IMG/VR virus record: IMGVR_UViG_3300028920_000001
Coordinates: 362,961-426,960 of that record
Length of the DNA stretch: 64,000 nucleotides
Reading direction: 5' to 3' (one strand)
Shown here: piece by piece, positions 56 through 14,245 of the stretch
Numbering within the stretch: position 1 is the first letter of the stretch
Layout of the letters: the number at the start of each line of letters is the position of its first letter
The notes under the pieces: generated by a model
The model's database searches: none
The model's input: only the letters and a program-made list of their open reading frames with translations
What the model was told of the DNA's origin: nothing
Program-made: the position numbers and the translations under genes

Positions 56-3000
56 ATGACAATTGGACCTTTCACGACGTATGCCCCTCCTGGCGTCTAC
101 ACTCAGACTATTGTTGAGCCAGTCGTTATTCAGCTCCTAGGAGGGCTGAGGGTTCCGGTATTGATCGGAACGGCCCAAGAGACACTCACTCAGACCGATT
201 TTGAAATGATTCGTGGGTCCAGCAGCGTGGCTGATACCCCGATCTTCAATGAGGATGTCTCTGGTCGGTGGATTGTTAGTGGGACTAATCAAAATCCTAT
301 TATCGGTAGTCAAGATGGGACCCTTTTTAAATTTAAAGTTCGTAATTATCCGATTGTTGATGGTGATGGTCTTGGTCGTACTACATTTGATGTAACCAAG
401 GTTTCGGTTACTGTTAATGGTGAAGCTACAGTTGTTTCCCAGGTTGATGGCACTAATGGTGTTATTACCTTATTAACTGCTCCTCAGTCTACCGATACTG
501 TTCTAATCAGTTATTTCTTCCATCGGAAAGATACCCGTATCACCGATGACGTTTCTGATCAGGTGACCGAGGACGCAGCGTCCTTGATTGCTCCCAAGGC
601 TGAAACCTACGAGATTACGACTGGTACTAATGATACATTAACTGTGTATATTAATGATGCAATTGCATCAAATTCGGTTACTTTGACCGCTGGAATTCGA
701 AGTGCCACAGACATTGCTAATGATATTAATGGAGCAGGCGTTACTGGGTTGACCGCTACTGTCCATGTTGATAACCAAGGTTTGAATCATCTGCGACTGA
801 ATGCCCAAGGCAACATTTTAATCGGTAGTGGTACTGCCAATGGTATCCTTGGGTTTAATCCCGGAGATTACACTAATCGTACTCGTGTATTCCGTACGTA
901 TCAAGGTCCGATTGTAGATGGTTCTGATGGTGGTATCACTACCACTGAACCTTCCAAGGTGACGGTCTTGGTCAATGGAGTCCAGGTAGTTGCATCCGAG
1001 GTGGATGGTACCAATCGCTTGGTTACTCTGCCAACTGCTCCGGTTCCTGGTGCTATTGTCACAATTGAATATTGGTTCAATACTTGGCAGGATACGTTTG
1101 ATTATCTGCCGAATTCAAATATTGTGACGATGGGCAATGTGGGTATCTCGCCTGGTCGGCGAGATTATCTGAATGGTCCGGACTTTGTAGTCGTTAATGA
1201 AAACGACCAGTCCAAGATTCTGTGGGGCACAGCTTGGCAGGTTGTTTCTGGTGAGGTCACCGGGTCTACGCCGCTTGATTCCACACAGGTTACCGCCATG
1301 TTGGTGGATGACCGAATGTACGCGGTTGAATTAGATCGGTATGTAGATACTACTACTAACACAGTATCTTCTACACAATTTGAGCTTCCACTGATCGCCA
1401 CTACCGGTAATGGACGAGATACGCCGCTTGGTACATCTGTTTACCAGACTGTGACCAATAGCCGGATTGATCTGCCAACAAATCGTCCTGATTTGGTGAT
1501 TGTTCATACTGGCAAGACTCCTAGGGATGCCCTTTCTCGGCCTCCGGTTACGGTTCTCGAGGTTAACATCAGCAATAATACCATAGTTCTTCAGGATACG
1601 GTGCCTGCGGACTATAATGCTTATGCCACTTTCTGGTATAACCGCACAGTTGATGATAATTACACTTTGACTTGTCAAACACCTGGTGCCAGTGGGATTG
1701 GCAAGTTTACGGTTACTTCCGAGCTAAATAACGATGTTAATCTTTACAGTGTCATCTTTGGTACTAAGAATGCATTGCCTCAGACAGTGCAATGGCCAAG
1801 TGGGGTGGAGAAGATAACTGATGCTATCCATTATGGTGGACAGCCTGTGCCCGAGACAGTTACTATCACTTTTGATAGTACGCTGCTTCCAAACACTCAT
1901 GCGTCGTTCTCGAATGCTCTGCCTGAGCCATACGACCTATATACTACTTATAGTGATCAATTTGGTGGGATTCGGATTGATGGAGCTTCTGCATTCTCTG
2001 TTGATTTGAATACGGCGTTCGCTGCTCAGTTGTTAGGTAGTCCGGTTTCCGGTACTCTGCCGGCAGCTATTACGACAACTGATGAGCTCGTGCTTGAGAT
2101 TGATGGAGTTATTCTAAATATCAATGAGACGACTGTTACGGCAGCTGCAGGCACTTGGTCTACCGTTACCACCCTTGCAGGTGTGGTTACTGCCATTAAT
2201 GCTGTAATTGATGCTGACGTTCAAGTTCATCCTGATGGATCTGGCACGTTTGCTTCAACAGCGGCTAATAGTCTGGCTTCCGTAGTTACTTATGGGACTC
2301 AGAGCATTCTGAAGATTGCCGGTAGAAATGTTCAAACTTCTACCAATGGTCTAGAATCTCAGGTTAAGGTTCTGACTCCAACTACTGTTGGTCAGGTTGA
2401 TATTTCGGCCACTCTTGGTTTCACTCCGAATCAAGAATCCCTTGGTAGCTGGGATGGTTTGAATCAGCCAGCAGAGATCATTAGTTCGGTTGATGCTCCG
2501 TACTTGATTACTGCTAGTGTGGATGATTCTTTCCTGTTCAATATTGATGGACAGGATTATCAAGCTACCATTCCGTCTGGTTCGGCGGTGACTCAGGGTC
2601 AGGTGGTTGATGCTATTAATGCTGGGTATCTAGACACTGCTCCTGCTGCTGATCAGGCTACTGCGTTGGCTCAGGCTATTGTAGTGGCGAACTCATTGGC
2701 TACTAATTACGGTGGCCATCAGGCTTTGGCTACTTGGCACGTATTAGCGGATGCTGCTAATAATGTGACAGCGCCTGTGGCCACTGATTTGTCATCATTG
2801 CTTACTTTGTTAGCAGATATTAAGGCCCAGTTCAATGCCCATATCATTAATACTGGTGGTGTTTATCATAATGGCTCGACTGATACCACCAATACGATAT
2901 CAGCAGCTGATCCGACTACTCTGGAAGAAGCTATCAATTTCATCTGGGTTTTGAAGAATAATTTCAATTCGCACTTGGCGACAGCCGGAACCATCCACCT

Positions 3001-4771
3001 TTTGGCTGATGCAACCAACGTTGAGACTAATAGTAACTCTCAGTTGGTAGCAATTGCTGGTGCAGGTTTGTACGCGAATAAGATTATTCTTAGATCGCGT
3101 GTCAATACCATTTCTTCGCGAGTGGCAATTAGTACGTTGGGGACTGCCAATACGAAGCTCGGGTTTACTGCTGGTGATTCGGCCTCTGTTAATCAACCAA
3201 CTGCTTCTCGTTTAGCAGCTGCTTTGAATGCTGATGCTACTTTTGCTGCAGCGGCAGTGGCATGGCCAGTAACGACCCAGGGTCGTGGCACATTCCTCCA
3301 GATTGATTCTCTTTCTGCCGGTATCGGCTCCAGTATCACTTTCACTAGTGTGACTGGCACGGTCTTTACCACAGATACGGGAATCGGTATTACTCCTGGT
3401 GTTAGTGGTGATATCGGTGAGGCAGCCACTGCTGGTTATACAGTTTCCTCTTCGAATCCAAATGGATCAAGCGGAACTGGTGTTCCGGGCCAGACTTATA
3501 CAGATGCTCAGACCGGGCTTCGGTTCACTGTTCTTCCGGCATCTGCTGGTGATTACGCTGATGGTGGTTCGTTCACTTTGATTGTGAATTCCACCTTCAC
3601 TGCTGATGCCTCAATTCCGTCTCGAGCTATTCCGGGCTTGGAATTCTACGTTTTCAACACCCTGAATGTGGGCGTTGATTCGACAGCTATTCTGAGCACA
3701 TTTAATAAGGGTGGTTCGGAACCAGCAGTGGGTGACGTTTACTACGTCAGCTACAACTACGCTAAGTCGGATATTTCCACTGCCCTATTCCGGGATCTGA
3801 AGAAGATTCAGCAGAATTTTGGAGCTCCTACTCCCGAAAATCCGCTCAGTCTTGGAGCTCGGTTGGCTCTGTTAAATGGTTCGGTTCTGCTTGGCCTGCG
3901 TCAGGTGCTTCGAGCCCCGAATTCAGCTCAAGCTTCTCTGCAATCATACGCAGATGCTATCAATGAGCAGAAGAAACCAATTGAGGGCAGCGTGAAGCCG
4001 GATGTATTGGTTGCTCTAGCAACTGATCCAGAAATCTTCAGTTTGCTGAATCAGCATGCTGTGTTCATGTCCGCTCCGCGCCAGGAAGGTGAGCGAATTA
4101 GCATCGGTGGTGTTGCAGCTGGTACCACCCCGTTGGGTGTGCGTGCTATTGCTCAAGGTCTGCAATCTGAGTTGTTCATTCTGACTTATCCTGATACTTT
4201 CGTAATTTCGGTTACGGATCAGCAGGGTAATACGGTTGAACAGCTGATTGATGGCTCGTATGCTGCAGCGGCTTTAGCGGGTAGTGCAACCAATCCGGCT
4301 GTAGATGCCGCTACCCCATGGACTCGTCGTCAAGTTCTCGGGTTCAAGAGGTTGGGCCGCATTCTGGATCCGACTGAAGCTAATCAGGTGGCGGTCAGTG
4401 GTGTCAGCATTATTGAGCGAGTCGACACCGGGATGCGAATTCGCCACGGGTTGACGACTCGAATTGATAACGTCATTACGCGTACACCGAGCGTGACGTT
4501 GACGATTCATTACATCCAGCAGTCTACTCGCCGAACTTTGGATCCATACATTGGGCAGAAGTTCACGAGCACTCTGATTAAGTCGGTTGAGTCCAAACTG
4601 AACGGTATGTTCAGCGGACTTATCGATAAGGAAATTGTAACTGAGGTTGGTGGAATTGCGGTGACGATTGATGAAGATGATCCTACTATCATGAGGACGT
4701 CTGCCATCTACGTCCCAGTGTTCCCGCTTGAGTATATCGTTAGTACCTTCCAGGTACGAATTCGGCTCTAA
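56..4771 (+). CDS. Contractile tail sheath protein, unusually large (1571 aa) with multiple insertion domains
   Basis: N-terminal APPGVY motif typical of sheaths; C-terminal sheath-like domain (…RIRHGLTT…KFTSTLIKSVESKLNGMFSGL…YVPVFPLEYIVSTFQV); lies upstream of tube, tape measure and baseplate genes. Confidence 0.9.
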   Translation: MTIGPFTTYAPPGVYTQTIVEPVVIQLLGGLRVPVLIGTAQETLTQTDFEMIRGSSSVADTPIFNEDVSGRWIVSGTNQNPIIGSQDGTLFKFKVRNYPIVDGDGLGRTTFDVTKVSVTVNGEATVVSQVDGTNGVITLLTAPQSTDTVLISYFFHRKDTRITDDVSDQVTEDAASLIAPKAETYEITTGTNDTLTVYINDAIASNSVTLTAGIRSATDIANDINGAGVTGLTATVHVDNQGLNHLRLNAQGNILIGSGTANGILGFNPGDYTNRTRVFRTYQGPIVDGSDGGITTTEPSKVTVLVNGVQVVASEVDGTNRLVTLPTAPVPGAIVTIEYWFNTWQDTFDYLPNSNIVTMGNVGISPGRRDYLNGPDFVVVNENDQSKILWGTAWQVVSGEVTGSTPLDSTQVTAMLVDDRMYAVELDRYVDTTTNTVSSTQFELPLIATTGNGRDTPLGTSVYQTVTNSRIDLPTNRPDLVIVHTGKTPRDALSRPPVTVLEVNISNNTIVLQDTVPADYNAYATFWYNRTVDDNYTLTCQTPGASGIGKFTVTSELNNDVNLYSVIFGTKNALPQTVQWPSGVEKITDAIHYGGQPVPETVTITFDSTLLPNTHASFSNALPEPYDLYTTYSDQFGGIRIDGASAFSVDLNTAFAAQLLGSPVSGTLPAAITTTDELVLEIDGVILNINETTVTAAAGTWSTVTTLAGVVTAINAVIDADVQVHPDGSGTFASTAANSLASVVTYGTQSILKIAGRNVQTSTNGLESQVKVLTPTTVGQVDISATLGFTPNQESLGSWDGLNQPAEIISSVDAPYLITASVDDSFLFNIDGQDYQATIPSGSAVTQGQVVDAINAGYLDTAPAADQATALAQAIVVANSLATNYGGHQALATWHVLADAANNVTAPVATDLSSLLTLLADIKAQFNAHIINTGGVYHNGSTDTTNTISAADPTTLEEAINFIWVLKNNFNSHLATAGTIHLLADATNVETNSNSQLVAIAGAGLYANKIILRSRVNTISSRVAISTLGTANTKLGFTAGDSASVNQPTASRLAAALNADATFAAAAVAWPVTTQGRGTFLQIDSLSAGIGSSITFTSVTGTVFTTDTGIGITPGVSGDIGEAATAGYTVSSSNPNGSSGTGVPGQTYTDAQTGLRFTVLPASAGDYADGGSFTLIVNSTFTADASIPSRAIPGLEFYVFNTLNVGVDSTAILSTFNKGGSEPAVGDVYYVSYNYAKSDISTALFRDLKKIQQNFGAPTPENPLSLGARLALLNGSVLLGLRQVLRAPNSAQASLQSYADAINEQKKPIEGSVKPDVLVALATDPEIFSLLNQHAVFMSAPRQEGERISIGGVAAGTTPLGVRAIAQGLQSELFILTYPDTFVISVTDQQGNTVEQLIDGSYAAAALAGSATNPAVDAATPWTRRQVLGFKRLGRILDPTEANQVAVSGVSIIERVDTGMRIRHGLTTRIDNVITRTPSVTLTIHYIQQSTRRTLDPYIGQKFTSTLIKSVESKLNGMFSGLIDKEIVTEVGGIAVTIDEDDPTIMRTSAIYVPVFPLEYIVSTFQVRIRL

Positions 4772-4793
4772 TCTCCTCTTGCGAGGTATGTTG

Positions 4794-4833
4794 GCTGTTG
4801 CCTGAGGTCGCGGGCAGGGACCTCAGGCGCAGC
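4794..4833. terminator. GC-rich hairpin between convergent genes; probable terminator or transcript stabiliser
   Basis: Perfect 9-bp stem CCTGAGGTC (4801-4809) / GACCTCAGG (4819-4827), extendable via GCTG/CAGC, between the sheath stop (4771) and the minus-strand stop (4835). No strong U-tract. Confidence 0.65.
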
Positions 4834-4834
4834 T

Positions 4835-5362
4835 CTATTTCCCGCTATTATTCTTGGTAGGCGGAAGCAGGGGCATCGAGTCGATAGCGGCAGTCAAAGC
4901 CTTCATTGATTTACGACTCTTGTTGACCTCCCGCTTGACGTCAGCGCTGAGTTTGTTGACATCTACATTCTTATCTGTGGATTCTAAACTCGCGGCACTG
5001 GACTTAACCCGACGACGCTTTCGACGGTGAACAGTACGAGCCAAATCTTCATCATCAACTGTTGCTCGTACTCCCTCAACTTTATCAAACCAGATTTCCC
5101 GGTGATATTTTCGGCTCAGGATTCGGTTGGCACTGGCTAGAACACTGGAGAGGCGATTTTTGACTTGGTCGCTATCTTCCCCAGGAATTCGGCTCAAGCC
5201 GAAGGCGACCTTAGCGATATATCGTTTATCAAAAAAGGCGAGTGGGAGTTCATCGGCTCCGGTGTTTAAGAACTCGGCAGCTCGTTCGCCATAAGTTCCG
5301 GTGTTGTCAGTTTTATAAGATTTTAGAAATTCAGCAGGTGATCTTACAGTGCGTTTTGACAT
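4835..5362 (-). CDS. Basic 175-aa protein, putative winged-helix + coiled coil (cassette gene C2)
   Basis: Paralog of 7164-7688: shared RAxxFL, RATVxDEDxAR and terminal LLPP motifs. Confidence 0.8.
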   Translation of the reverse strand: MSKRTVRSPAEFLKSYKTDNTGTYGERAAEFLNTGADELPLAFFDKRYIAKVAFGLSRIPGEDSDQVKNRLSSVLASANRILSRKYHREIWFDKVEGVRATVDDEDLARTVHRRKRRRVKSSAASLESTDKNVDVNKLSADVKREVNKSRKSMKALTAAIDSMPLLPPTKNNSGK

Positions 5363-6286
5363 TTATTTCTCCATCTGTTCGTTCCAGAGTTCTACGACCT
5401 CCCACGCTTCATTTACAGCGTGATATTGTTTAACCAGCTTGTCACTTCCATTGTTCCGATCCGGATGATACCTTGCGGCCAATCTTTTGTAAACCGATCT
5501 GGCTCTTTTAATATCGACTTTATGTCTACCTCTAGGTCTAGAGATACCGAGGGTTTCGCAGGCGTTACGGATGGCAGTAACAGTAATAGTGTCGGTGTCA
5601 GAAGGAGTGAAATCCCGCCTAAGATTTCTAATTTTCTTGAGAAGATCTTCATAGGTGACGCGGACTTCGTACTCGAAATCTTCAACTAGCCCTCTTCTTA
5701 CATCAGGTTCAATACCTTCTAATCTTACATTGACGAATGTATCTGTTAACGCCTTGATACTGGCGTAAAACATTCGGGCGTTGTCGGCTCTAAGATCTTC
5801 AGGATTGATTTCTGGAATTGAAGGTTTTGTTTTTTTAGATTTAGGTTTTTTGGGTGGTCGTCTTCGATGAATATACCCGTCTTTATTAGGATAATCTATG
5901 TATTTATCTGAAAAATATTCCTCAAGGAATTCTTTTAATTTGGTAGGATCTCCTTTGGCTTTTTTTCCAAGAACATAAGCTGTAGCCAGGGGCATTTTTC
6001 TAACCGCGATGGCATCCCATAGTGGTTTGGCTAGATCCCCCATTAATAAAATTCCGGCTCTCTTGGCAGGGCCATATGTATTTTTTGCTCCAATTTCTAC
6101 AAACCATTGACTTCTTCTTAGAGGAGTTTTATCTCCTTTGTCACGTCGGTTAATGCTATAGAAGGACCAAACTTTTCTTTCAAGTTTAGCTATTTTATAT
6201 TGATTGGTTGGGATGTCTTTTTCATACTCTTCAAGTAATTCAAGGATTAGCTCTTCTACATGCTTATCAAGGTTCTGCAGATTCAT
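5363..6286 (-). CDS. J-domain (DnaJ-like) protein with HTH-like N-terminus (cassette gene B2)
   Basis: C-terminal ACETLGI…ARSVYKRLAARYHPDRNNGS…YHAVNEAWEVV with intact HPD motif; paralog of 7685-8548. Confidence 0.85.
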   Translation of the reverse strand: MNLQNLDKHVEELILELLEEYEKDIPTNQYKIAKLERKVWSFYSINRRDKGDKTPLRRSQWFVEIGAKNTYGPAKRAGILLMGDLAKPLWDAIAVRKMPLATAYVLGKKAKGDPTKLKEFLEEYFSDKYIDYPNKDGYIHRRRPPKKPKSKKTKPSIPEINPEDLRADNARMFYASIKALTDTFVNVRLEGIEPDVRRGLVEDFEYEVRVTYEDLLKKIRNLRRDFTPSDTDTITVTAIRNACETLGISRPRGRHKVDIKRARSVYKRLAARYHPDRNNGSDKLVKQYHAVNEAWEVVELWNEQMEK

Positions 6287-7157
6287 GTTGCTTTAGGTGC
6301 TTCACAACGGTTTCGATCTCTTTGAATAAAGAGTCCTCTTTTTTCATTTGAGAGGACATTTGATTAATAAGATTCTTACCTCGAGAGTTAAATTCCATTA
6401 CTTTTGCTAATAATTCTATAACTTGAAGTTGGGTCTTGTTGTCTACTTTCTTGTTGATTCCGGTGCAGAGTCGCATCAACCCTGCAGTTCGATCTGCACT
6501 TGCAGACGAAAGTTCTTGAATTGCGATCAATTTAGTATCATATTCTCCGAGGAATTCAAGCTCAGTTTCAATCCCTTGGTTAATTTTGGTGGCAGTGCCG
6601 GCAATTTCTTTTAATTGTGATGTTGTGCCGTTTTGAAAGCTTTCTACTTTTTCTTCGAGTTCTTCAACTTTCTTATAAAGGTTGGTGGAGATTTGAATTA
6701 AGGCAGCTACTCCTCTTATTAATTGATCTGCAGTGTTTTCTTCTTGTTCTTGGGTAACATCAGAACCTACGTTATGAGCTATGACTGGTTCTTCTTCAGG
6801 TTTTTCCTTCAGGGGATATTCATTTGGCCAAATTATGTGTTTGATATAAACAGTATCATTTGCTGCTTTAGTAAGCAATCCAATAGCTTTGTCCTTGTTT
6901 CCAATTTCGTAAGTTGTATTTCTAAGTGAACCACTTCTAATTGCCAATTCTTCTTCAATCAGGCGACTCATTAATTTGCGCTGCCAGTCTTTTGACATGG
7001 CCATCTTGCGCATTTGTGGAACTTCTAAATCTCCGTCACCTCTTGGAGAGAATAATTCTTTCATTGAAAGCGGGTCCTTTGAACTAATCAGTCTTTCTAA
7101 GACTACTCCAGCCCAAAGGACCTTCGCTTCATTCTTATTTAAGTTACGTGAAACCAC
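6267..7157 (-). CDS. Putative winged-helix + coiled-coil protein (cassette gene A2)
   Basis: GTG start; DPLSMKELF…SKDWQ…TYEIGNK matches the N-terminus of 8545-9660; heptad-like C-terminal half. Confidence 0.75.
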   Translation of the reverse strand: MVSRNLNKNEAKVLWAGVVLERLISSKDPLSMKELFSPRGDGDLEVPQMRKMAMSKDWQRKLMSRLIEEELAIRSGSLRNTTYEIGNKDKAIGLLTKAANDTVYIKHIIWPNEYPLKEKPEEEPVIAHNVGSDVTQEQEENTADQLIRGVAALIQISTNLYKKVEELEEKVESFQNGTTSQLKEIAGTATKINQGIETELEFLGEYDTKLIAIQELSSASADRTAGLMRLCTGINKKVDNKTQLQVIELLAKVMEFNSRGKNLINQMSSQMKKEDSLFKEIETVVKHLKQHESAEP

Positions 7158-7163
7158 GTTCTA

Positions 7164-7688
7164 TTATTCTTTTTCTTCCTGGACTGGAGGCAACAGTTTC
7201 TGAATTCGATCATCAGAAATCAGGTTACTGATTTTCTTGACATTACGGACGAAGCTACGAAGTTTACGACCTTCAGGATTTGAGGTTGAAATCTTACGGG
7301 CATCGATCATGCCGAGGCTATTATCAACACTAACCTTGGCTGAGGCTAATCGCTTAGTACGGTCAGCTAAATCAAATCGAGCTTTATCTTCATCATTGAC
7401 AGTGGCACGGTAGCCAACTCCGCGTTGGCAGATATACCCACGTTGATATTCTTTGCGTAGAAGATCACGGGCTCGAGTCATACATGCCCGTACGCTATCT
7501 GCTTCCTTGGAAGTAGCACGTGGTGTATGATTATAACCATTAATGGCTTTTACGATTTCCTGTGCCGGGAAATACTGATACCGCAAATTCTTAGCGGCCC
7601 AGTCGAGGAAATGAGCAACACGTTGAGTTAGGCTCATCCCAGGAAGTGACTGGTAATCCGCTACTGCCGCCTTTCGTTTCTTGGTCAT
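7164..7688 (-). CDS. Basic 174-aa protein, putative winged-helix + coiled coil (cassette gene C1)
   Basis: VRACMTRARDLLR…ICQRGVGYR resembles the OmpR-type wing motif; paralog of 4835-5362; 4-nt overlap with the upstream gene. Confidence 0.8.
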   Translation of the reverse strand: MTKKRKAAVADYQSLPGMSLTQRVAHFLDWAAKNLRYQYFPAQEIVKAINGYNHTPRATSKEADSVRACMTRARDLLRKEYQRGYICQRGVGYRATVNDEDKARFDLADRTKRLASAKVSVDNSLGMIDARKISTSNPEGRKLRSFVRNVKKISNLISDDRIQKLLPPVQEEKE

Positions 7689-8548
7689 AGCTTCTCCTTA
7701 TTCAAGGAATCATTGTATTCCTTGAGAATTTCGTGTGCTCCTACTGCTTCTTCAAACAAATCCCTAGTCTCTTCATTGCCACCGTGAGCATCAGGATGAT
7801 ACAACCTGGTGAGTCTTTTCATTTGTTTAGTAGCTTGTTTTAGATCTATTGGTTGATTAATTGGAGGCGAATCAATTTGTAGGATTTTACAAGCGCGAAT
7901 CAATTTTTTTCGATCTATTGTAGTTCCGAATTTAATTTTGCTTTTTGCGGCTCGGGCAGCTCTGGATTGCCAACCCATGATTAATGTTTTCAAATCAATT
8001 TCAAATTCTCTTAGAAGATTATCTTTTTCAATTTCAAGTAAATCTCCGAGTTTTCCTTCAAGATGATCAGTGATCATCATTCTGATTTGTGCCCAGAATG
8101 GTTTATCTCCGTTTTCTCGAACAATTAAACCAATCCCAGTTTCAGTTTTTCTTTTAATGATTGGAAATTTTTTCTTAATTTGTTTTCCACTGGGGAGTCG
8201 TGCTTCATAGGATTTATTTTCATATTTATTGAATTCAATATTTAGTGCTTTTTCAATTGGTTCTCCTCGTCTTTTAGCTGTAGTGATTATTCGATAAATA
8301 GTATGAAAAGGCATTCCATTTTCAAGTCTTTCCCAAAGAGGACTTGATAATCTAGGTGGTAACTTATAAATTGACCGTCGAGTTCGATATTGAATATCAG
8401 TGATTCCGAGAGTATGAACGACAGTTTTGGCTGCTCTTTTACTGTTTTGGATACCTTTATAATGTTTCCAAAGGGTATACTCGAATTCAGCTTTCTCCTC
8501 TTGGGTGGAAAGTTTCTGATATTCTTCCACTAATTGACTCGTGTTCAT
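7685..8548 (-). CDS. J-domain (DnaJ-like) protein with HTH-like N-terminus (cassette gene B1)
   Basis: C-terminal ACKILQI…ATKQMKRLTRLYHPDAHGGNEETRDLFEEAVGAHEIL with intact HPD motif. Confidence 0.85.
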   Translation of the reverse strand: MNTSQLVEEYQKLSTQEEKAEFEYTLWKHYKGIQNSKRAAKTVVHTLGITDIQYRTRRSIYKLPPRLSSPLWERLENGMPFHTIYRIITTAKRRGEPIEKALNIEFNKYENKSYEARLPSGKQIKKKFPIIKRKTETGIGLIVRENGDKPFWAQIRMMITDHLEGKLGDLLEIEKDNLLREFEIDLKTLIMGWQSRAARAAKSKIKFGTTIDRKKLIRACKILQIDSPPINQPIDLKQATKQMKRLTRLYHPDAHGGNEETRDLFEEAVGAHEILKEYNDSLNKEKL

Positions 8549-9660
8549 TTCTTGAAAATGCGGGTTTGGACTTTACGGTTAAGTTCAGAATCAAAAATAA
8601 CTGCTTTAGTACGTTTAAATCCGAATTCTCTTAAAATATTAGCGATTTCTTTAGCTTCTTGTCCTTTTGGATTTATTTGAAGTTCCAGATAATTGCAAAT
8701 ATCTTTTATACTTACAGCAGATAAATTTTGAACAAAATCAGCAATATTTTTCCTCAATTCAATTTGTTTCAAATTTGGTTGGGGATAAACTGTATGAACA
8801 TGAGTGTCATGTTTTTGACTAATTTTTCTGAGTTCAGTTTCAATTGCTTCTAATCTGGTTGAATGATACTCAAGAATTTGTAAATATTGAACTAGCTTTT
8901 CAAGAATTACTAATCCAACATTAGTTTGATCAGATTCTTTTAATTTTGGTTCTTGCTTTGATTCAAGAGCTACGGAATGTTTAAGTTGCTTGACATTTCT
9001 TTTTAGAAATCCAGGTGCAGTTACTCTTTGTGTGTATCGATACCATTTAGGGAAAAGTAATTCAACAATTTTTTCGTTATCTGGTTGAATGACGGCTTTA
9101 CCAACTCGAGCTTTATACTCAACCCATCTGGTCCAGCCTTTAACTGAACAAAATCCAGTAGCGACAAGCCGTTTCATAAAAGCTGATTGCCAACTTGCTG
9201 TTTCTTGAAATAAATCATCCCTTCTAATTGGTTTTCCTTTAGCAAGTTTTCTTACTACTTTTGTTGCGTCAATAAACTGAGTATGTTGCTCATCAGTTAG
9301 GCGTTGGAAAATACTGAGTGCATAAATATTTTCAAAATTGCTATCTGCAATGGCGGTTCCGCAAATAGCAACCTCTTGTGTAAGAGGATAATGGGATATA
9401 ATTTGACGAATAGCTTGTTTTTCTTTAATTACATATGTATCGGCATTACGTTCAATAAGCCCCTTTCCGGCTAAATGATACATACAGCCCTTTTGCCAAT
9501 CTTTAGAGGCTGTCTTTTTTCTATTACCGATTCCTATAAAGATATCCTCGATGGTAACTGGTGCGTCAGTTTTAAGCATTTCTTTTAAGGCATTACGGAT
9601 AATCTTCTCAAGGGCAGAGAGGGTTTTTTGATCCATAACTGAACTTACAAGTTGATTCAA
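8545..9660 (-). CDS. Multi-winged-helix/coiled-coil protein (cassette gene A1); start may be ATG at 9636
   Basis: Two internal repeats (APVTIEDIF…ASKDWQ; KPIRRDDLF…ASWQ), a coiled-coil-like segment and a C-terminal wHTH-like segment (SIKDICNYL…EIANILREFGFKR). Confidence 0.75.
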   Translation of the reverse strand: MNQLVSSVMDQKTLSALEKIIRNALKEMLKTDAPVTIEDIFIGIGNRKKTASKDWQKGCMYHLAGKGLIERNADTYVIKEKQAIRQIISHYPLTQEVAICGTAIADSNFENIYALSIFQRLTDEQHTQFIDATKVVRKLAKGKPIRRDDLFQETASWQSAFMKRLVATGFCSVKGWTRWVEYKARVGKAVIQPDNEKIVELLFPKWYRYTQRVTAPGFLKRNVKQLKHSVALESKQEPKLKESDQTNVGLVILEKLVQYLQILEYHSTRLEAIETELRKISQKHDTHVHTVYPQPNLKQIELRKNIADFVQNLSAVSIKDICNYLELQINPKGQEAKEIANILREFGFKRTKAVIFDSELNRKVQTRIFKK

Positions 9661-9670
9661 TCAATTTACG

Positions 9671-9910
9671 ATGTACAGTTTGAATATGAATCATCAATTT
9701 GAAGAATATCAAGGTCCGGAGAAGCACAACAATCAATGGGAATTTACTAATGGGGATGATCGAATTCAAATTAATTTAGAAATGAATATTGTTTATGGAG
9801 ATAAAATGAAAAAGTGTAAATACTGCGGACTCATGTATGCCGTGGAATTTGAACAGCCGAAATTTCAGACTTGTGAAGAAGTGTATGTTGATGAGGTAAT
9901 GAAATCATGA
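9671..9910 (+). CDS. Small hypothetical protein with CxxC and C-terminal VDEVMKS
   Basis: 79-aa ORF, ATGA-coupled to the next gene; CKYC motif. Confidence 0.65.
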   Translation: MYSLNMNHQFEEYQGPEKHNNQWEFTNGDDRIQINLEMNIVYGDKMKKCKYCGLMYAVEFEQPKFQTCEEVYVDEVMKS

Positions 9911-10392
9911 GTTCTAGTGTTCAAGCTCAGATTGATGATGATATCCTTAAGCATTTGCTTAAGGGTTTAACTCAAACAGTATCTTCGATACCAATTTCAA
10001 TCCAAACCAGGATTACTGAGTTTGTTGGGTTTGAATCAGATATTTTATTAGCCAAGCGGCTTTACTCCGGTCTTTTAGGAAAGGGGACATTTCAAGGTCA
10101 AACAATCAAATTTGAAGATACGGAATATTCATTAAGCTGGGCTAGTGAATCTCAAATGCGAATTCCTCCCATTCAGATTCAAACTAATCCTAGTTTTAGT
10201 TTGGATCAGGTCAAGATGGTTTATAATAAGCCTCAGTTTATGGTTTATGAAGAACCAGTGAAGATGGGTACCGAAAATCCATTGGTTGAACTTCGTAATG
10301 CACTCATACGTTGTCATCGAGAAGGTATTTCAATCAAACAAGTAGATGAAACTTATGTGTTAGCAGTAGCTCAATGGGTAATGGATCAATGA
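9907..10392 (+). CDS. Hypothetical protein ending in VAQWVMDQ
   Basis: 161-aa ORF with ATGA overlaps on both sides. Confidence 0.75.
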   Translation: MSSSVQAQIDDDILKHLLKGLTQTVSSIPISIQTRITEFVGFESDILLAKRLYSGLLGKGTFQGQTIKFEDTEYSLSWASESQMRIPPIQIQTNPSFSLDQVKMVYNKPQFMVYEEPVKMGTENPLVELRNALIRCHREGISIKQVDETYVLAVAQWVMDQ

Positions 10393-10799
10393 TTTTAAGG
10401 GTTGTTCTTGACAAAATAAATGCGGGGTCACCGCCGGCCGTCCAATATCAAAAAAATGAAAAGGATAAGTGTCTTATTTCAGTTGATGATAAGACAGCTG
10501 CTACACCTTGGTCTAATGTAAAAGATACTACTTTTTCAGTCCCTTTACATCATTTAGATGCGAATGAAGCTAAACAATTTTTAAAGGATCGATTTGCTTG
10601 CTTGAATGAAGATGGTTGTATTATGGTTCCTTATATGAGTCCTGTAAATGGAGAGGTTGTATTTGGATTAGTATATTATCCTAAAAGAACATTCATGTCA
10701 TTTGATAACAATCATAATATGGCACAACCATTTGAACCGAATGTTTTAGTAGATTATTTAATTAATATTATGCTAGTAGATGAAGTTATGGATAACTAA
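10389..10799 (+). CDS. Hypothetical protein ending in VDEVMDN
   Basis: Start moved from 10374 to the in-frame ATG at 10389, which overlaps the upstream TGA (ATGA). Confidence 0.75.
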
Positions 10800-11404
10800 G
10801 GATTAGCTAAATCAGTAGTATTTCCAGTATCAGCTCGAGCCTTCAGTTTTCCATCTCCTGAGTCTGCCCAAACATACCAAGAACCAGTAGGTGGGGTTCC
10901 AGGATCAGAAATTGTTGAAAGTTCCAATAATGGACCCAATACTCCGGTAGCCCCTTGAGGTCCTGTAGCACCTATTGGGCCCGTTGGACCTATCGGTCCA
11001 GTTACAATTGACCCTGTTATTCCTTGTGGACCTACTGGCCCTGCTGGTCCAGGTGATCCCTGAGGACCTGCTGGTCCAGGTGGACCGATCGGTCCTTGTA
11101 TTCCCTGTGGACCTTGGAACTGCTGGATTTGTGGATCTACTGTGTTATTCTGAAGGAATCGAATAGTGAAGCCATATTCAAAAATATTAGATACTTGAGT
11201 ATTTATACTGGTGATGGTGACTTGAGAAATTGACCACTCATCAGGAGATAGGCTCAGGGTATTAAATATTTGTCTGTAGTTTTCCGGTTTATTTAGTTCT
11301 GTAACAGGATTAGGTAAAATCGCATTTGAGGTTAGGGAAACAAAGGCGTTGACTACATTATTATAATTTGAAGTTAGTTTTTCAACGCCTACGTTCGTAG
11401 TCAT
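10796..11404 (-). CDS. Short collagen-like (Gly-X-Y) protein, possible fibre or decoration protein
   Basis: Central [16 protein letters not shown]…GATG tract between small N- and C-terminal domains. Confidence 0.8.
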
Positions 11405-11445
11405 GCTAAACGATACGAGGCATTAAAGCTGGCTTAAATTATCAA

Positions 11446-11766
11446 TTAGTTTAATTTATCATGGACTAATTGATTTAATTTTTTAACAAATTCACTCCTG
11501 CCAGATTTGGAATCAAATCTGTTTGTTACTTCGATTTTGGCTCTAGGCGCTTTTAAAGCAATTCTCATATCTTCATTTTGGTCTATCCACACTCTTAGTC
11601 GGCACGGATAGGTCTCGCGGCCGATTTTGATGTTTCCGTGGGCATAATAGATATGGTTTCCGGCTTGGGTTTCTTCAAGGTCCAGACTTGGTAATTTTAA
11701 GAGGATACTCTTAAGATGGTCGGTCATCTGGAGCCTATAGAACTTTGAAATCACTTTCTTTTCCAT
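11446..11766 (-). CDS. Hypothetical protein
   Basis: The track start (11862) overlaps the divergent AAA gene. In-frame ATG at 11766 (MEKKVISK), preceded by AAGGA, is more plausible. Confidence 0.6.
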   Translation of the reverse strand: MEKKVISKFYRLQMTDHLKSILLKLPSLDLEETQAGNHIYYAHGNIKIGRETYPCRLRVWIDQNEDMRIALKAPRAKIEVTNRFDSKSGRSEFVKKLNQLVHDKLN

Positions 11767-11834
11767 ATCCTTATATACCAAAAATTGGAGTCGATTTTCG
11801 GGCACTAATAAACCTTCTTTGATTAGGATACGAT

Positions 11835-13382
11835 ATGGGACTATTACGTACAGCCGGTTCATACCTCAGCGCACTTTCCACAGGAGAGTACGAAATCCCT
11901 AATCCTCTGGCAGCTGCGGTCAATTATGCCATTGATTCATATTTTGCTAAGAGAGATGAACGGGCTCGGATAGCTGAAGCTAATCGTAAAGAAATGCCAA
12001 TGGACCTTGATGTATATCTCAAGGAAGTTTGGCTTGGATGTGAAATTCATAAGGCTATCAATCTTTCAGGTAGTTATCCGGCATATGCTAAAGCTGTTAA
12101 TGCTTGGGCATTCACTCGAATGTTTACTGCGTATGCTGGAGCGAATGCTTCGTATGAGATAGTTCCGGTTCTAGATCAATCTGAATATAAAGATTATTTG
12201 AAGAGTAACCGAGAATATAGAACTCAATATGAACCTATAAATATTAGTTTGACCCAAGCTGTCACTCTTCCGGTATACGGGACTTTCTTCGTTAAGAATC
12301 GAAGGACTGGAGCCCATCTAATAATTGCGTTTGACTTCTGTTACTATGGAATGGGATGCAGCGTTAGTGTGATGGCTCATTCTCACGGCCAGCATGAAGC
12401 TGAAGCCTTCCTGGCCGATTTGACTGGTTCAATTCAGGCCAATAACATTTATTTCAAGAGTTGCCTCTCATTCAATAGAGGATACCTTGATTTTCATTAT
12501 GTAATTCCAACTACTTGGCAACAGGTAATTTTAAAGGATAGTCTGAGAACGCAAATTCAGAAGAATTCTGTTGGAGTTCTTGATCATATTTCTGATTTAT
12601 CATCTATTGGAATGAGTGCTAATCAAAGTATGCTTTTGATTTCGCCGCCCGGAATGGCTAAGACTACTATGTTCCGGGCTACTTCCAATGAGATTAATGA
12701 GCAAGCTACCCGAATTTGGTGTACTGGTAAGTCTATTTCATATCCGGAACATGTTACTGCGTTGTTTGAAGCAGCTCGAGATTTAAGTCCGTCAGTTATA
12801 TTTATTGAAGATATGGACCTATTTGGTGGTGATCGTAGCACCTTAGGTCGAGATAGTAGTGTTTTGAATGAATTTTTAGCTCAACTTGATGGGACTCAAT
12901 CTAATGCGGGCGTCGTCATTATGGCATCCACTAATGATCTTGACTCTATGGACGAGGCTTTGATCAATCGTCCCGGTCGATTTGGGGTTAAGATTGAAAT
13001 ACCATATCCGGATGCTGAGGATCGGAAGAAAATGCTGGTTTCCTTCTTTAAGGCGTACCATGCAAGGCCGGCTCCTTCAGTTAGCGATGAAGGCTGGGAT
13101 AATATTGTTAAATTAACTGCTGGTTTTACTGGAGATTATATTAGGGAAGTAGCCAAGACAGCGGTAATTAAGGCTGTGGCTGAGGGCCGATGTTTAAGTG
13201 GTCAAGTTAGTTTTACAATGGACGATTTGACTGCAGCTGGGGAACAAGTTTTACAGAATTACCGGATCGGCAAGAGAGCCAAGAGACATCACACTATCTC
13301 TATTGAAGATGGTGGGGAACCCGTAGAGGCAGTAATAGCTTCAGAAGGTCCGAAGGAACCTTCTATGAAGTTAGTATCATAG
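11835..13382 (+). CDS. AAA+ ATPase (classical-clade, single module) with unknown N-terminal domain
   Basis: Walker A variant ISPPGMAKT, Walker B VIFIEDMD, sensor-1 and second region of homology STNDLDSMDEALINRPGRF. Confidence 0.9.
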   Translation: MGLLRTAGSYLSALSTGEYEIPNPLAAAVNYAIDSYFAKRDERARIAEANRKEMPMDLDVYLKEVWLGCEIHKAINLSGSYPAYAKAVNAWAFTRMFTAYAGANASYEIVPVLDQSEYKDYLKSNREYRTQYEPINISLTQAVTLPVYGTFFVKNRRTGAHLIIAFDFCYYGMGCSVSVMAHSHGQHEAEAFLADLTGSIQANNIYFKSCLSFNRGYLDFHYVIPTTWQQVILKDSLRTQIQKNSVGVLDHISDLSSIGMSANQSMLLISPPGMAKTTMFRATSNEINEQATRIWCTGKSISYPEHVTALFEAARDLSPSVIFIEDMDLFGGDRSTLGRDSSVLNEFLAQLDGTQSNAGVVIMASTNDLDSMDEALINRPGRFGVKIEIPYPDAEDRKKMLVSFFKAYHARPAPSVSDEGWDNIVKLTAGFTGDYIREVAKTAVIKAVAEGRCLSGQVSFTMDDLTAAGEQVLQNYRIGKRAKRHHTISIEDGGEPVEAVIASEGPKEPSMKLVS

Positions 13383-13465
13383 CTTCTTCATCGAACACAC
13401 AGGTTATAATGCCATTCAGACGGCACAAAGATCTGAACATACGGAGCCGCTAGAGAGGATTGAAA

Positions 13466-13966
13466 ATGAGCAACGTTAACGAGATCGTCGAGAACATGGT
13501 TGCGGCTTCCACCCGATTAGCCGCGATGGATCCTAAAGATGCAGCAATCACTAAGGTGATTGATGGTATCCAGGCTCAGGCTCAAATGGTAGCTACTAGC
13601 AAGCCTGAAGTTGAAGAGGAATCCGTTCCTGATGCGGAATTTATCGGGCAGCAGATTAAGAAGCTGTATTCGGCCTGCATGATTCCGGCTAATAACTACC
13701 GTAGACTTGCTAATATCTGTAATGAATTAGACAAGGCTTTCGCGGTGGCTTCTCGGCCTCATAACGCCCATCAGCTTCCGAGGCTGGCTGGAATTATTAA
13801 GCAAGTTGCTGGCGTATTTGCTGAGGTAGATACAGTTCAAGATCTTGATAAGCCGCTAGCTCAAATTGAAAAAGCTGTTCACGGGATTTACGGCGATCAG
13901 TCTCAGAATTCTACTTTCTATTTTGAGCGTCGGGGTAAGGGAAGCCACGCCAATCCCGAGAAGTAA
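13466..13966 (+). CDS. Hypothetical helical protein
   Basis: ATG at 13466 preceded by AGAGGA (13454-13459); codon usage resembles the sheath and tube genes. Confidence 0.75.
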   Translation: MSNVNEIVENMVAASTRLAAMDPKDAAITKVIDGIQAQAQMVATSKPEVEEESVPDAEFIGQQIKKLYSACMIPANNYRRLANICNELDKAFAVASRPHNAHQLPRLAGIIKQVAGVFAEVDTVQDLDKPLAQIEKAVHGIYGDQSQNSTFYFERRGKGSHANPEK

Positions 13967-14245
13967 TTGCCTACTGAGCACGAAGAACCTACTCCGCAAT
14001 TAGCCCCTGGAATTGGATTTGTATTGGAAGGGGATGGGCGGTGGGATGTCCAGACAATTCCGTCGAAGGTAGTTGATTCGGCAGAATTTAATGGATATTT
14101 GACTATTCAAGGATATAAATGTGCAGTATTTATCACCCCTGAGGGTGAGCAATGGGCACAGAAGGTATCTGGAACTCCTGCCCCTAAGGGTGATAATGAT
14201 TTGACACAGATGGCTACTAAAATTGCTAATTTAACTTATAACTAA
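13967..14245 (+). CDS. Hypothetical protein
   Basis: 92-aa ORF with TTG start immediately after the upstream TAA; protein-like composition. Confidence 0.55.
   Translation: MPTEHEEPTPQLAPGIGFVLEGDGRWDVQTIPSKVVDSAEFNGYLTIQGYKCAVFITPEGEQWAQKVSGTPAPKGDNDLTQMATKIANLTYN

What the first reader, a model, noticed from the sequence alone, without database searches (positions are those of the whole stretch)
4835..9660. Tandemly duplicated three-gene cassette: wHTH/coiled-coil + HTH-J-domain + wHTH/coiled-coil
Seen: six tightly coupled minus-strand genes in the order A1-B1-C1-A2-B2-C2. A1/A2 share P(V/L)(T/S)xx(D/E)(I/L)F…SKDWQ…TY(V/E)IxxK and (L/I)(L/I)(F/W)PxxY. B1/B2 share PLW(E/D)…MP…Y, a central F(W/Y)AxI…(E/D)FExxxK/R helix pair and a C-terminal HPD J-domain. 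C1/C2 share RxAxFL…RxLxxxYxR…G(Y/V)RATVxDEDxAR…LLPP. The paralogs are highly diverged and share only motifs, yet gene order and coupling are preserved, implying an old, selected unit. Established: J-domains recruit Hsp70/DnaK through HPD, and DnaK/DnaJ remodel DNA-bound replication initiators (lambda P, P1 RepA). Inference: an undescribed three-component DNA-binding complex that brings host DnaK to DNA, for phage transcription or replication switching, host takeover or anti-defence, with two specificities. I know of no named system with this architecture.
Basis: partly seen in the sequence, partly recalled or inferred. Interest (0 to 1): 0.85.

Follow-up and report, generated by a model that had tools for sequence, protein, structure and literature searches.

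The report
Duplicated phage J-domain three-gene module
A giant uncultivated phage carries two diverged copies of a conserved, undescribed three-gene unit: a J-domain co-chaperone plus two partner proteins, one a modelled winged helix, which probably directs the host Hsp70 (DnaK) onto those partners.

Summary
Six translationally coupled minus-strand genes (4835-9660) form two A-B-C triads. B1/B2 and C1/C2 are homologous over their full length (E about 1e-10). A1/A2 are weak pairwise, but both match an A-family profile built only from other phages.

The triad is a real, recurrent module. B lies immediately upstream of C in all 14 independent large-phage contigs examined, and an A-family gene precedes B in at least 12 of them. 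The C family has 461 clusters in an exhaustive search. All are metagenomic and unnamed, and none is covered by Pfam, PHROGs, NCBIfam, PADLOC or PDB sequences.

B ends in a canonical J-domain with an invariant HPD. Its fold matches the E. coli DnaJ J-domain at 2.0 Å rmsd. C is a confidently modelled basic winged helix plus a helical hairpin, followed by a conserved C-terminal LLPP tail. That tail resembles the IscU LPPVK site bound by Hsp70 HscA.

The two triads belong to two deep clades, so this is not a recent tandem duplication.

Function is inferred only. The most likely reading is a dedicated J-protein that delivers its operon partners to host DnaK. DNA binding, the "HTH" in B and any role in replication are unproven.

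The parts
8545..9660 (-). A1, 371 aa. It has two copies of the A-family N-terminal winged-helix-like domain (residues about 9-90 and 124-206), an LLFP motif (9049-9060), and a C-terminal coiled-coil region.
   Evidence: ORF. A leave-out family HMM gives 58 bits with two N-domain matches (iE 4e-9 and 1e-11). Domain layout. Motif coordinates.
7685..8548 (-). B1, 287 aa. A novel helical N-region followed by a C-terminal J-domain (about 7691-7903), with HPD at 7790-7798.
   Evidence: ORF. Pfam DnaJ scores 23.7 bits, below the gathering score of 27.8. The family profile hits the E. coli DnaJ J-domain at E 1e-9. HPD is invariant in 13 B proteins.
7164..7688 (-). C1, 174 aa, pI 10. Winged helix plus helical hairpin, with wing motif GYRATV (7398-7415) and C-terminal KLLPP (LLPP at 7185-7196). 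It belongs to the 'AHFLDWAA' clade.
6267..7157 (-). A2, 296 aa, GTG start. One winged-helix-like N-domain (about 6822-7139), an IIWP motif (6825-6836), an acidic linker (pI 4.3) and a long coiled-coil C-terminus.
5363..6286 (-). B2, 307 aa. In order: N-terminal helical hairpin; helical domain plus beta-hairpin (residues 51-142, 5861-6136); disordered basic linker; second helical hairpin; J-domain (5369-5581), with HPD at 5459-5467.
   Evidence: Pfam DnaJ scores 33.1 bits, above the gathering score. AlphaFold2 model pLDDT 81. Foldseek matches the E. coli DnaJ J-domain (1xbl, 5nro) at probability 1.0, rmsd 2.0 Å, 36% identity.
4835..5362 (-). C2, 175 aa, pI 10. Winged helix (residues 24-100, 5063-5293), helical hairpin (104-161, 4880-5053), wing motif GVRATV (5057-5074) and C-terminal LLPP (4859-4870).
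   Evidence: AlphaFold2 pLDDT 95, pTM 0.84. Column conservation. dN/dS 0.034 against L002.
4774..4834 (.). Short gap between the convergent 1571-aa gene (+) and C2 (-). It holds a 9-bp GC-rich inverted repeat (CCTGAGGTC ... GACCTCAGG), a possible bidirectional terminator for the six-gene operon.
   Evidence: Read directly from the sequence. The consensus terminator scan did not call it, because there is no T-run.

Best explanation
The region holds two anciently diverged copies of a conserved three-gene phage module.

- B is a class III (specialised) J-domain co-chaperone. Its canonical C-terminal J-domain should engage the host DnaK/Hsp70 and trigger ATP hydrolysis.
- A and C are B's co-translated partners, and most likely its dedicated clients.
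- C is a strongly basic winged-helix protein with a helical hairpin and a flexible C-terminal (K/R)-L-L-P-P-K tail.
- A has one to three winged-helix-like domains, ending in an LLFP-type motif, then an acidic linker and a coiled coil.

Proposed mechanism: the helical hairpins and coiled coils of A, B and C assemble into a complex. B's J-domain then loads DnaK onto the LLPP tail of C, and perhaps onto the LLFP motif of A. The precedent is the dedicated J-protein HscB, which hands the LPPVK motif of IscU to the Hsp70 HscA. DnaK action would switch the oligomeric or nucleic-acid-bound state of A and C during infection. The two triads would be orthogonal versions of this switch.

Shown: gene structure, paralogy, purifying selection, strict B-C (and usual A) co-occurrence, the J-domain sequence and fold, the fold of C, and motif conservation.

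Inferred: the DnaK interaction, the identity of the client, complex formation, nucleic-acid binding, and the biological role.
For: - J-domain: HPD is invariant in 13 B proteins and all 13 hit Pfam DnaJ. The profile hits the E. coli DnaJ J-domain at E 1e-9. The fold matches at rmsd 2.0 Å with 36% identity.
- Module conservation: B sits directly upstream of C in 14 of 14 contigs, usually overlapping, with an A-family gene upstream in at least 12.
- B and C trees agree on the split between the two triads.
- C model: pLDDT 95. Conserved K/R residues lie on helix 2, helix 3 and the wing (K51 91%, R88 89%, R99 97%). The tail is conserved at L165 79%, L166 77%, P167 87% and P168 69% of about 147 sequences. 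It ends a median of 7 residues from the C-terminus. LLPP never occurs in the first 120 residues.
- An LLFP-type motif follows the N-domain in 10 of 14 A proteins.
- Precedent: LPPVK of IscU is the HscA recognition site, and binding is stabilised by the J-protein HscB (PMC6506825).
- Phage J-proteins that act on host DnaK are known, for example Rki of RB43 (PMC3486835).
- Purifying selection: dN/dS 0.03 for C2 and 0.20 for B2.
Against: - No interaction was tested, and no multimer prediction was available.
- The LLPP tail could bind A, B or another partner rather than DnaK.
- The conserved basic surface of C fits nucleic-acid binding but does not prove it.
- No repeated DNA sites (operators or iterons) were found near the operon.
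- B1's J-domain scores below the Pfam gathering score as a single sequence.
- One C homolog (P0153, locus L011) replaces the tail with a 390-aa extension, and the L024 C has a degenerate tail. The tail is therefore not universal.
- The host is unknown, and so is whether the phage encodes its own DnaK.
Confidence: 0.45

Rival explanations
1. Host takeover in the manner of Rki. B, helped by A and C, titrates or redirects host DnaK. This could stabilise sigma-32 and raise chaperone levels for a very large virion, or shut down host functions. A and C would be targeting or regulatory subunits rather than clients.
For: Rki of phage RB43 is a class III J-protein that binds DnaK, stabilises sigma-32, and needs both its J-domain and a unique second domain. 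B also has a unique non-J region with no known relatives. The phage genome is very large, with a 426,960-bp contig.
Against: This model does not explain why two basic or winged-helix partners are strictly co-inherited and co-evolve with B. It also does not explain why a phage would keep two diverged triads. Rki acts alone, has an N-terminal J-domain, and shares no similarity outside the J-domain.
Confidence: 0.2
2. A replication-initiation or genome-segregation complex. A, C and the N-region of B would bind an origin-like or centromere-like site. The J-domain would bring in DnaK to remodel the nucleoprotein complex, as DnaK/DnaJ do for lambda O-P-DnaB and for P1 RepA dimers.
For: C is a winged helix. 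Weak Foldseek neighbours are all winged-helix DNA binders (OmpR/ToxR/TcpP type, MarR, linker histone, ScpB/MukE). Two independent language-model queries on the N-regions of B2 and B1 both point to the ParB HTH (64/100 and 75/100 hits, scores 0.78 and 0.74). In several phages the triad lies among DNA-metabolism genes.
Against: hhalign of the A, B and C profiles against P1 ParB and P1 RepA gives probability of 0.5% or less. No B protein hits Pfam HTH_ParB. No iteron-like or parS-like repeat array lies near the operon. The atlas scores fall in the range the tool itself calls 'lead only'. In this phage lineage the triad sits beside virion genes.
Confidence: 0.15
3. A morphogenesis helper. The triad would recruit DnaK to fold or assemble giant virion proteins encoded next to it.
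For: In the window phage and its relatives (L014, L024/L031) the triad lies in a syntenic block with the 1571-aa protein, an AAA ATPase and the baseplate/tail module. In L011 a collagen-like protein follows the triad.
Against: In more distant phages the neighbours are nucleotide-metabolism and small early-type genes. Basic winged-helix proteins are not typical assembly chaperones. In the window the triads are transcribed opposite to the flanking structural genes.
Confidence: 0.1
4. Anti-defence. The triad would interfere with host immunity that depends on DnaJ or DnaK, or would mask phage DNA.
For: A published review of large phages notes that DnaJ is required by a bacterial NLR-related defence protein and speculates that phage chaperones act in counter-defence (PMC12619734). 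The A family evolves fast and has an acidic linker.
Against: None of the six proteins matches a PADLOC model, though that library covers defence rather than anti-defence. C is very strongly conserved (dN/dS 0.03), unlike typical arms-race proteins. There is no direct evidence.
Confidence: 0.07

Closest known systems
HscB (Jac1) - IscU - HscA (Ssq1): a dedicated J-protein, its client, and an Hsp70
   Same: A specialised J-protein works with one particular client. The client carries a short Leu-Pro-Pro motif (LPPVK in IscU) that the Hsp70 substrate-binding domain recognises (PMC6506825). C ends in a conserved (K/R)LLPPK tail, and its gene is coupled to that of J-protein B.
   Different: There is no sequence or fold relationship. 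C is a winged helix, not an Fe-S scaffold. B's non-J part is unrelated to the HscB C-domain, and B's J-domain is C-terminal. A third partner (A) is present. The Hsp70 would be the host's general DnaK. This is a mechanistic analogy only and was not tested.
Rki (ORF 057w) of T4-related phage RB43, the first characterised phage J-domain protein
   Same: A phage-encoded class III J-protein with a canonical HPD J-domain and a unique second region. It acts on host DnaK and is not a generic co-chaperone. It lies in a small locus of unknown genes (PMC3486835).
   Different: Rki is 237 aa with an N-terminal J-domain and is monomeric. No conserved winged-helix partner genes are described for it. B has a C-terminal J-domain, about 230 residues of unrelated N-region, and obligate A and C neighbours. 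The only PHROG matches for B cover its J-domain and go to families of unknown function.
DnaK/DnaJ-remodelled winged-helix initiators (P1 RepA, F RepE) and the lambda O-P system
   Same: Winged-helix DNA-binding proteins whose oligomeric state is switched by Hsp70 together with a J-protein (established knowledge).
   Different: Those systems use the host's generic DnaJ, not a dedicated phage J-protein. The profiles of A, B and C show no homology to P1 RepA (hhalign probability 0.5% or less). No iterons were found.
CbpA/CbpM and SV40 large T antigen (J-domain proteins that bind DNA)
   Same: A J-domain is combined with nucleic-acid-binding capacity. CbpA has a co-transcribed modulator, CbpM. B2's J-domain weakly matches CbpA models.
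   Different: In both, the J-domain is N-terminal and the remaining domains are unrelated to B. NCBIfam scores for B are far below the cut-offs (21.8 bits against a cut-off of 403 for CbpA).
Uncharacterised phage proteins that share the fold of C (Gordonia phage Trine A0A2Z4QAN0; uncultured Caudovirales; Escherichia phage adrianh A0A6B9X4A6)
   Same: The predicted structures match the C model over 146-171 aligned columns (E 7e-5 to 0.07, probability 0.98-1.0, query-normalised TM-score 0.48-0.68).
   Different: Sequence identity is 12-16%. All are unannotated. Their gene neighbourhoods were not examined.

Membership tests
J-domain proteins (Pfam PF00226 DnaJ) | His-Pro-Asp tripeptide in the loop between helices II and III | tested here: met
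   HPD is invariant in all 13 aligned B proteins and in all 14 B proteins from the loci. In the window it lies at 7790-7798 (B1) and 5459-5467 (B2).
J-domain proteins (Pfam PF00226 DnaJ) | Significant match to the family model | tested here: met
   B2 scores 33.1 bits, above the gathering score of 27.8. B1 scores 23.7 bits, below it. All 13 family members hit DnaJ, best E 5.5e-11. The family profile hits the E. coli DnaJ J-domain in the PDB at E 1e-9.
J-domain proteins (Pfam PF00226 DnaJ) | Helical J-domain fold | tested here: met
   The B2 model (residues 236-306, pLDDT about 90) matches 1xbl and 5nro chain B at probability 1.0, rmsd 2.0 Å and 36% identity.
J-domain proteins (Pfam PF00226 DnaJ) | Stimulates Hsp70 ATPase in an HPD-dependent way | not testable with these tools
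   This needs biochemistry.
Class I/II DnaJ (generic co-chaperones) | G/F-rich region, zinc-finger domain and DnaJ C-terminal substrate-binding domains next to an N-terminal J-domain | tested here: not met
   Only the J-domain matches. NCBIfam DnaJ models score 16-33 bits against cut-offs of 338-619. No DnaJ_C or zinc-finger Pfam hit was found. The J-domain is C-terminal. B is therefore class III.
ParB/Spo0J/KorB HTH (Pfam PF17762), considered for the N-region of B | Detectable sequence or profile similarity to the ParB HTH | tested here: inconclusive
   Language-model feature searches on B2 (residues 1-232) and B1 (residues 1-215) both favour HTH_ParB clusters, with scores of 0.78 and 0.74. 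The tool rates such scores as leads only. No B protein hits HTH_ParB in Pfam at E up to 1. The profile finds no ParB in PDB sequences. hhalign against P1 ParB gives probability 0.1%. No profile of the wider ParB family could be built.
OmpR/PhoB-type winged helix (Trans_reg_C), considered for C | Match to the family model or a close structural match | tested here: not met
   None of 149 C proteins gives a consistent Pfam hit. Foldseek hits to ArlR, TcpP, ToxR and RstA are weak: E 1.1-3.2, query-normalised TM-score about 0.3. Only the generic winged-helix topology is shared.
Iteron-type initiators (P1 RepA-like) | Homology to RepA WH1/WH2 domains and nearby iterons | tested here: not met
   hhalign of the A, B and C profiles against P1 RepA gives probability of 0.5% or less. 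No repeat array lies in 4700-11900.
Kite/kleisin winged-helix partners of SMC complexes (ScpB, MukE/F, Nse1/3) | Structural match, plus an SMC or kleisin gene nearby | tested here: not met
   Foldseek E 3-4, probability 0.07-0.3. Two of 149 members hit MAGE, at E 0.035. No SMC-like gene appears in any locus.
Known anti-phage defence systems (PADLOC) | Match to any defence-system protein model | tested here: not met
   No hit for any of the six proteins at E up to 0.1.
The A-B-C triad itself (a new family defined here) | Gene order A, then B (C-terminal J-domain), then C (wing motif GxRATVDDxD, LLPP tail), tightly coupled | tested here: met
   Both window triads meet this, as do L004, L005, L007, L009, L010, L011, L014, L015, L016, L019 and L024. 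L018 has B and C, but no clear A.

The most novel reading that the evidence does not exclude
A client-dedicated Hsp70-hijacking switch specific to large phages. A phage J-protein (B) loads host DnaK onto the LLPP tail of a basic winged-helix protein (C), and onto the LLFP motif of a winged-helix/coiled-coil protein (A). This would gate assembly or nucleic-acid binding of a phage nucleoprotein complex. One genome would keep two orthogonal versions. This would be the first virus-encoded counterpart of the HscB-IscU type of dedicated J-protein/client pair, and a new family of chaperone-controlled DNA-binding proteins.
Probability: 0.3. Interest if true: 0.8.

Novelty: new variant of a known kind. 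Interest (0 to 1): 0.62.

Why it matters
Only one phage J-domain protein, Rki, has been characterised in the literature I could search, and it acts alone. This finding is a widespread module: at least 461 C-family clusters at 50% identity, found in contigs of 134-427 kb as well as in shorter ones. In it, a J-protein is locked to two partner proteins, one of which carries a conserved Leu-Pro-Pro tail of the kind an Hsp70 recognises.

If B does deliver A and C to host DnaK, three things follow:
- Large phages would be shown to re-target the central host chaperone to a specific phage complex, rather than using it only for general folding.
- Three sizeable protein families that no domain library covers would gain an annotation.
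- Chaperone research would gain a compact, testable J-protein/client pair, present in two natural orthogonal versions within one genome.

If the partners turn out to bind DNA, the module would be a new type of chaperone-gated regulator. The closest analogues would be Hsp70 control of HSF1 or of plasmid RepA.

Tried and rejected
- DNA similarity of 4800-9700 to GenBank phages: none.
- tblastn of C1 and C2 against GenBank phages: none.
- Pfam, PHROGs, NCBIfam and PADLOC on the six proteins and on family alignments: only the J-domain matched.
- Profile searches of C, B and the N-region of B against PDB sequences: only J-domains.
- Foldseek of the C model against the PDB: nothing below E 0.5, only generic winged-helix neighbours. 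Foldseek of the B model: only the J-domain.
- Idea that A, the N-region of B and C descend from one duplicated winged-helix protein: rejected, hhalign probability below 1%.
- OmpR-type wing, suggested by the RGVGYRAT motif: not supported.
- ParB-HTH lead: not confirmed.
- P1 RepA homology: none.
- Operator or iteron search in 4700-11900: nothing convincing. The only meaningful direct repeat is residual C1/C2 coding similarity.
- Sigma-70 promoter hits: no more than in shuffled sequence (13 against 12.5).
- The fused C-terminal extension of P0153, and the genes inserted between A and B in L024: no Pfam hits.
- Bacterial and archaeal genome scan with one C-family pattern: no relatives. Sensitivity was limited to that one pattern.
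- Metagenome scan: found only the source contig.
- Three related-loci runs failed because the alignments were too diverse.
- Word-based protein searches for B found few relatives, so the B alignment stayed shallow at 13-16 sequences.
- Language-model atlas search on A2: uninformative.
- Literature searches found no description of this triad.

Full report
**1. What is there**

The window is the last 64 kb (362,961-426,960) of a 426,960-bp viral contig, IMGVR_UViG_3300028920_000001, also held as Ga0272441_10000011. Six ORFs lie on the minus strand between 4835 and 9660, in the order A1-B1-C1-A2-B2-C2.

Their junctions are typical of translational coupling:
- A1/B1 and B1/C1 share ATGA overlaps.
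- C1 and A2 are separated by 6 nt.
- A2 and B2 overlap by 20 nt.
- The B2 stop is directly followed by the C2 ATG.

A GC-rich hairpin sits in the short gap between C2 and the convergent 1571-aa gene. HMMs of the three families find no other copy in the 64-kb window.

**2. Is the paralogy real?**

- B1/B2 align over 288 residues (22% identity, E 4e-10).
- C1/C2 align over 150 residues (26% identity, E 2e-10).
- A1/A2 align only over 69 N-terminal residues (E 6e-4).

To test A more firmly, I built an HMM from the A-position proteins of twelve other triads, leaving out both window copies. It scores A1 at 58 bits and A2 at 64.5 bits (E 5e-20 and 6e-22 for a single comparison). It also shows that A1 holds two copies of the N-terminal domain, at residues 9-90 and 124-206.

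Against the related 4.5-kb contig L002, dN/dS is 0.034 for C2 and 0.20 for the part of B2 present there.

**3. Does the triad recur?**

Searches with B2 and with family alignments gave single triads in the same order and with the same coupling in many contigs:
- L004 (109 kb), L005 (47 kb), L007 (274 kb, high GC)
- L009, L010, L011
- L014 (182 kb), L015 (134 kb), L016 (210 kb)
- L018 (102 kb), L019, and L024/L031

Sources.

B is directly upstream of C in all 14 independent contigs. A recognisable A-family gene precedes B in at least 12 of them. L024 has two A-like genes with two unrelated genes inserted between them, and L018 has no clear A.

An exhaustive HMMER search with the C profile found 461 clusters (50% identity) at E up to 1e-3, and 345 at E up to 1e-10. 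Nearly all of the 150 best-scoring hits listed are 170-200 aa. The ten I looked up are metagenomic singletons without names.

Nothing was found in GenBank phages. A single C-family pattern also found nothing in one genome per GTDB species.
- The alignments are significant.
- A, B and C co-occur.
- No described operon matches.

**4. Anatomy**

*C.* AlphaFold2 with 149 sequences gives pLDDT 95 and pTM 0.84. The model has these parts:
- A short N-helix.
- A winged helix: H24-38, H46-54, a long H65-86, and a beta-hairpin at 90-100.
- An antiparallel helical hairpin: 104-132 and 140-161.
- A flexible tail.

Conserved positions are R27, A29, L32, P40, K51, P60, L82, Y86, R88, G97, R99, A100 and D106. 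Helix 3 and the first hairpin helix are rich in K/R. The pI is 10.

The tail motif (K/R)-L-L-P-P-K is conserved at L 79%, L 77%, P 87% and P 69%. It ends a median of 7 residues from the C-terminus. The exact LLPP string occurs in 49 of 150 tails and never in the first 120 residues.

*B.* AlphaFold2 with 13 sequences gives pLDDT 81 and pTM 0.47, typical of a multi-domain protein. The model has these parts:
- A helical hairpin, 8-46.
- A five-helix domain plus a beta-hairpin, 55-142, at pLDDT about 90. It carries the invariant W90 and G137.
- A disordered Lys/Arg/Pro-rich linker.
- A second helical hairpin, 170-226.
- The J-domain, 236-306.

The J-domain is canonical, with a YKRLAxxYHPDRNxG-like sequence. 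HPD is invariant. The profile hits the E. coli DnaJ J-domain at E 1e-9. Foldseek matches it at probability 1.0 and rmsd 2.0 Å. Nothing else in B matches the PDB, Pfam, PHROGs or NCBIfam.

*A.* From the alignment, A has one to three copies of an N-terminal domain of about 100 residues. Its pattern (…eLF…WQ..l..RL...G…Y…) looks like a winged helix. This domain usually ends in an LLFP/IIWP-type motif (10 of 14 proteins). An acidic, Pro-rich linker follows, then a C-terminal coiled coil.

A, the N-region of B, and C are not detectably related to one another (hhalign probability below 1%).

**5. History of the two copies**

In maximum-likelihood trees of 14 B and 14 C proteins, triad 2 groups with L004/L005/L009. 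Support is 100/99 for C and 85/85 for B, and the B value is below the tree tool's strong-support mark. Triad 1 falls among the other sequences, nearest to L007/L014.

Among the 150 best C-family hits, 112 score better against C1 and 38 score better against C2.

GC3 differs between the triads:

| Genes | GC3 |
|---|---|
| A1, B1 | 0.21, 0.25 |
| A2, B2, C2 | 0.32, 0.33, 0.45 |
| Large genes elsewhere in the window | about 0.19-0.22 |

So this is an old split. Either an ancient duplication was kept only here, or a second triad was acquired later. The composition hints at the latter, but that is inference. It is not a recent in-place duplication. B and C agree on this split, so B and C have travelled together across it.

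**6. Context**

In the window phage and its relatives (L014, L024/L031), the triad lies in a syntenic block with three other elements: the 1571-aa protein, a classical AAA ATPase (11835-13382) and the baseplate/tail module. Its position and orientation within the block vary.

In more distant phages the neighbours are different. They include thymidylate synthase ThyX, dCMP deaminase, a DNA polymerase fragment, a ligase, an SNF2 helicase, a DHHA1 protein and many small ORFs. No neighbour is conserved across the whole family, so the triad is a self-contained module.

**7. Mechanism**

It is established that J-domains act through HPD on Hsp70. It is also established that class III J-proteins give Hsp70 a specific client or location. 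The best-supported reading is therefore that B recruits host DnaK.

B is strictly coupled to A and C, which suggests they are its clients or partners. The conserved Leu-Leu-Pro-Pro tail on a flexible C-terminus is the kind of short hydrophobic, proline-containing element that Hsp70 substrate-binding domains hold. The precise precedent is the LPPVK motif of IscU. The Hsp70 HscA recognises it, with help from the dedicated J-protein HscB (PMC6506825).

I therefore propose that B presents C, and possibly A, to DnaK. This would switch the assembly state or the nucleic-acid binding of these basic winged-helix proteins.

All of this is inference. No interaction, DNA binding or phenotype was tested, and no DNA target was found.

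The rivals are set out in their own section:
- DnaK titration or sigma-32 stabilisation, as with Rki.
- A replication or partition complex.
- A morphogenesis helper.
- Anti-defence.

The ParB-HTH idea for B rests on two low-score language-model searches. Alignment-based tests did not confirm it.

**8. Comparison and novelty**

B is a member of the J-domain superfamily, class III. It is not a DnaJ, CbpA, DjlA or Rki ortholog. C and A belong to no described family. C has structural look-alikes among unannotated phage proteins.

I found no description of the triad in domain libraries or in the searchable literature. A 2025 survey of large aquatic phages only notes generic 'DnaJ' genes. I rate the finding a new variant of a known kind: a phage J-domain co-chaperone that here has two obligate partner families and is duplicated.

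**9. Verdict**

- Observation: confirmed.
- Interpretation: partly supported.
- Interest: 0.62.

The module is real, widespread and unannotated, and it offers a concrete, testable chaperone-hijacking hypothesis. Its function remains inferred.

Noticed in passing
window 56-4771 (+): A 1571-aa protein with no PHROG hit and only a sub-threshold DUF2460 match. It is 49-55% identical to a protein in L024 and is also present in L002. It is always near the triad in this lineage. GC3 is 0.41, above the genome norm.
   Followed up: partly
window 11835-13382 (+): A classical AAA ATPase (Pfam AAA, E 2e-22), 46-51% identical to ATPases next to the triads in L014 and L031. It is followed by conserved small genes (13460-13966, 13967-14245).
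   Followed up: partly
window 14226-15779 (-): A 517-aa ORF combining HNH-endonuclease and Mom-like DNA-modification PHROG matches, with very low GC (0.28). It is probably a mobile homing-endonuclease insertion. HNH-like relatives lie beside the triad in L014 and L031.
   Followed up: no
window 10796-11404 (-) and 48911-50461 (+): Collagen-like Gly-X-Y repeat proteins. The second gives strong tail-fibre PHROG hits. A collagen-like protein also follows the triad in L011.
   Followed up: no
window 18809-58927 (+): A run of very large plus-strand genes (1270, 1411, 1912, 1159 and 1997 aa), together with a baseplate-hub/lysozyme-like protein (24459-26114). This is the tail/baseplate module of a megaphage. 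Most of these proteins have no family match.
   Followed up: partly
L011 3285-4979 (protein P0153): A C-family protein fused to a 390-residue C-terminal extension that replaces the LLPP tail. The extension has no Pfam match.
   Followed up: partly
L024 6103-10194: Two A-family genes (6103-7881 and 9277-10194) are separated by two unrelated genes (7890-8390 and 8357-9280), all upstream of B. The A slot therefore tolerates duplication and insertion.
   Followed up: partly
window 15847-16530 (+): A 227-aa protein with no family match is unusually conserved, at 71-72% identity to L014 and L031. Neighbouring genes are 36-54% identical.
   Followed up: no
window 5037-5068 and 7378-7409: The only residual DNA-level similarity between the two triads (75% over 32 nt) lies at the RATVxDEDxAR wing motif of C.
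   Followed up: yes
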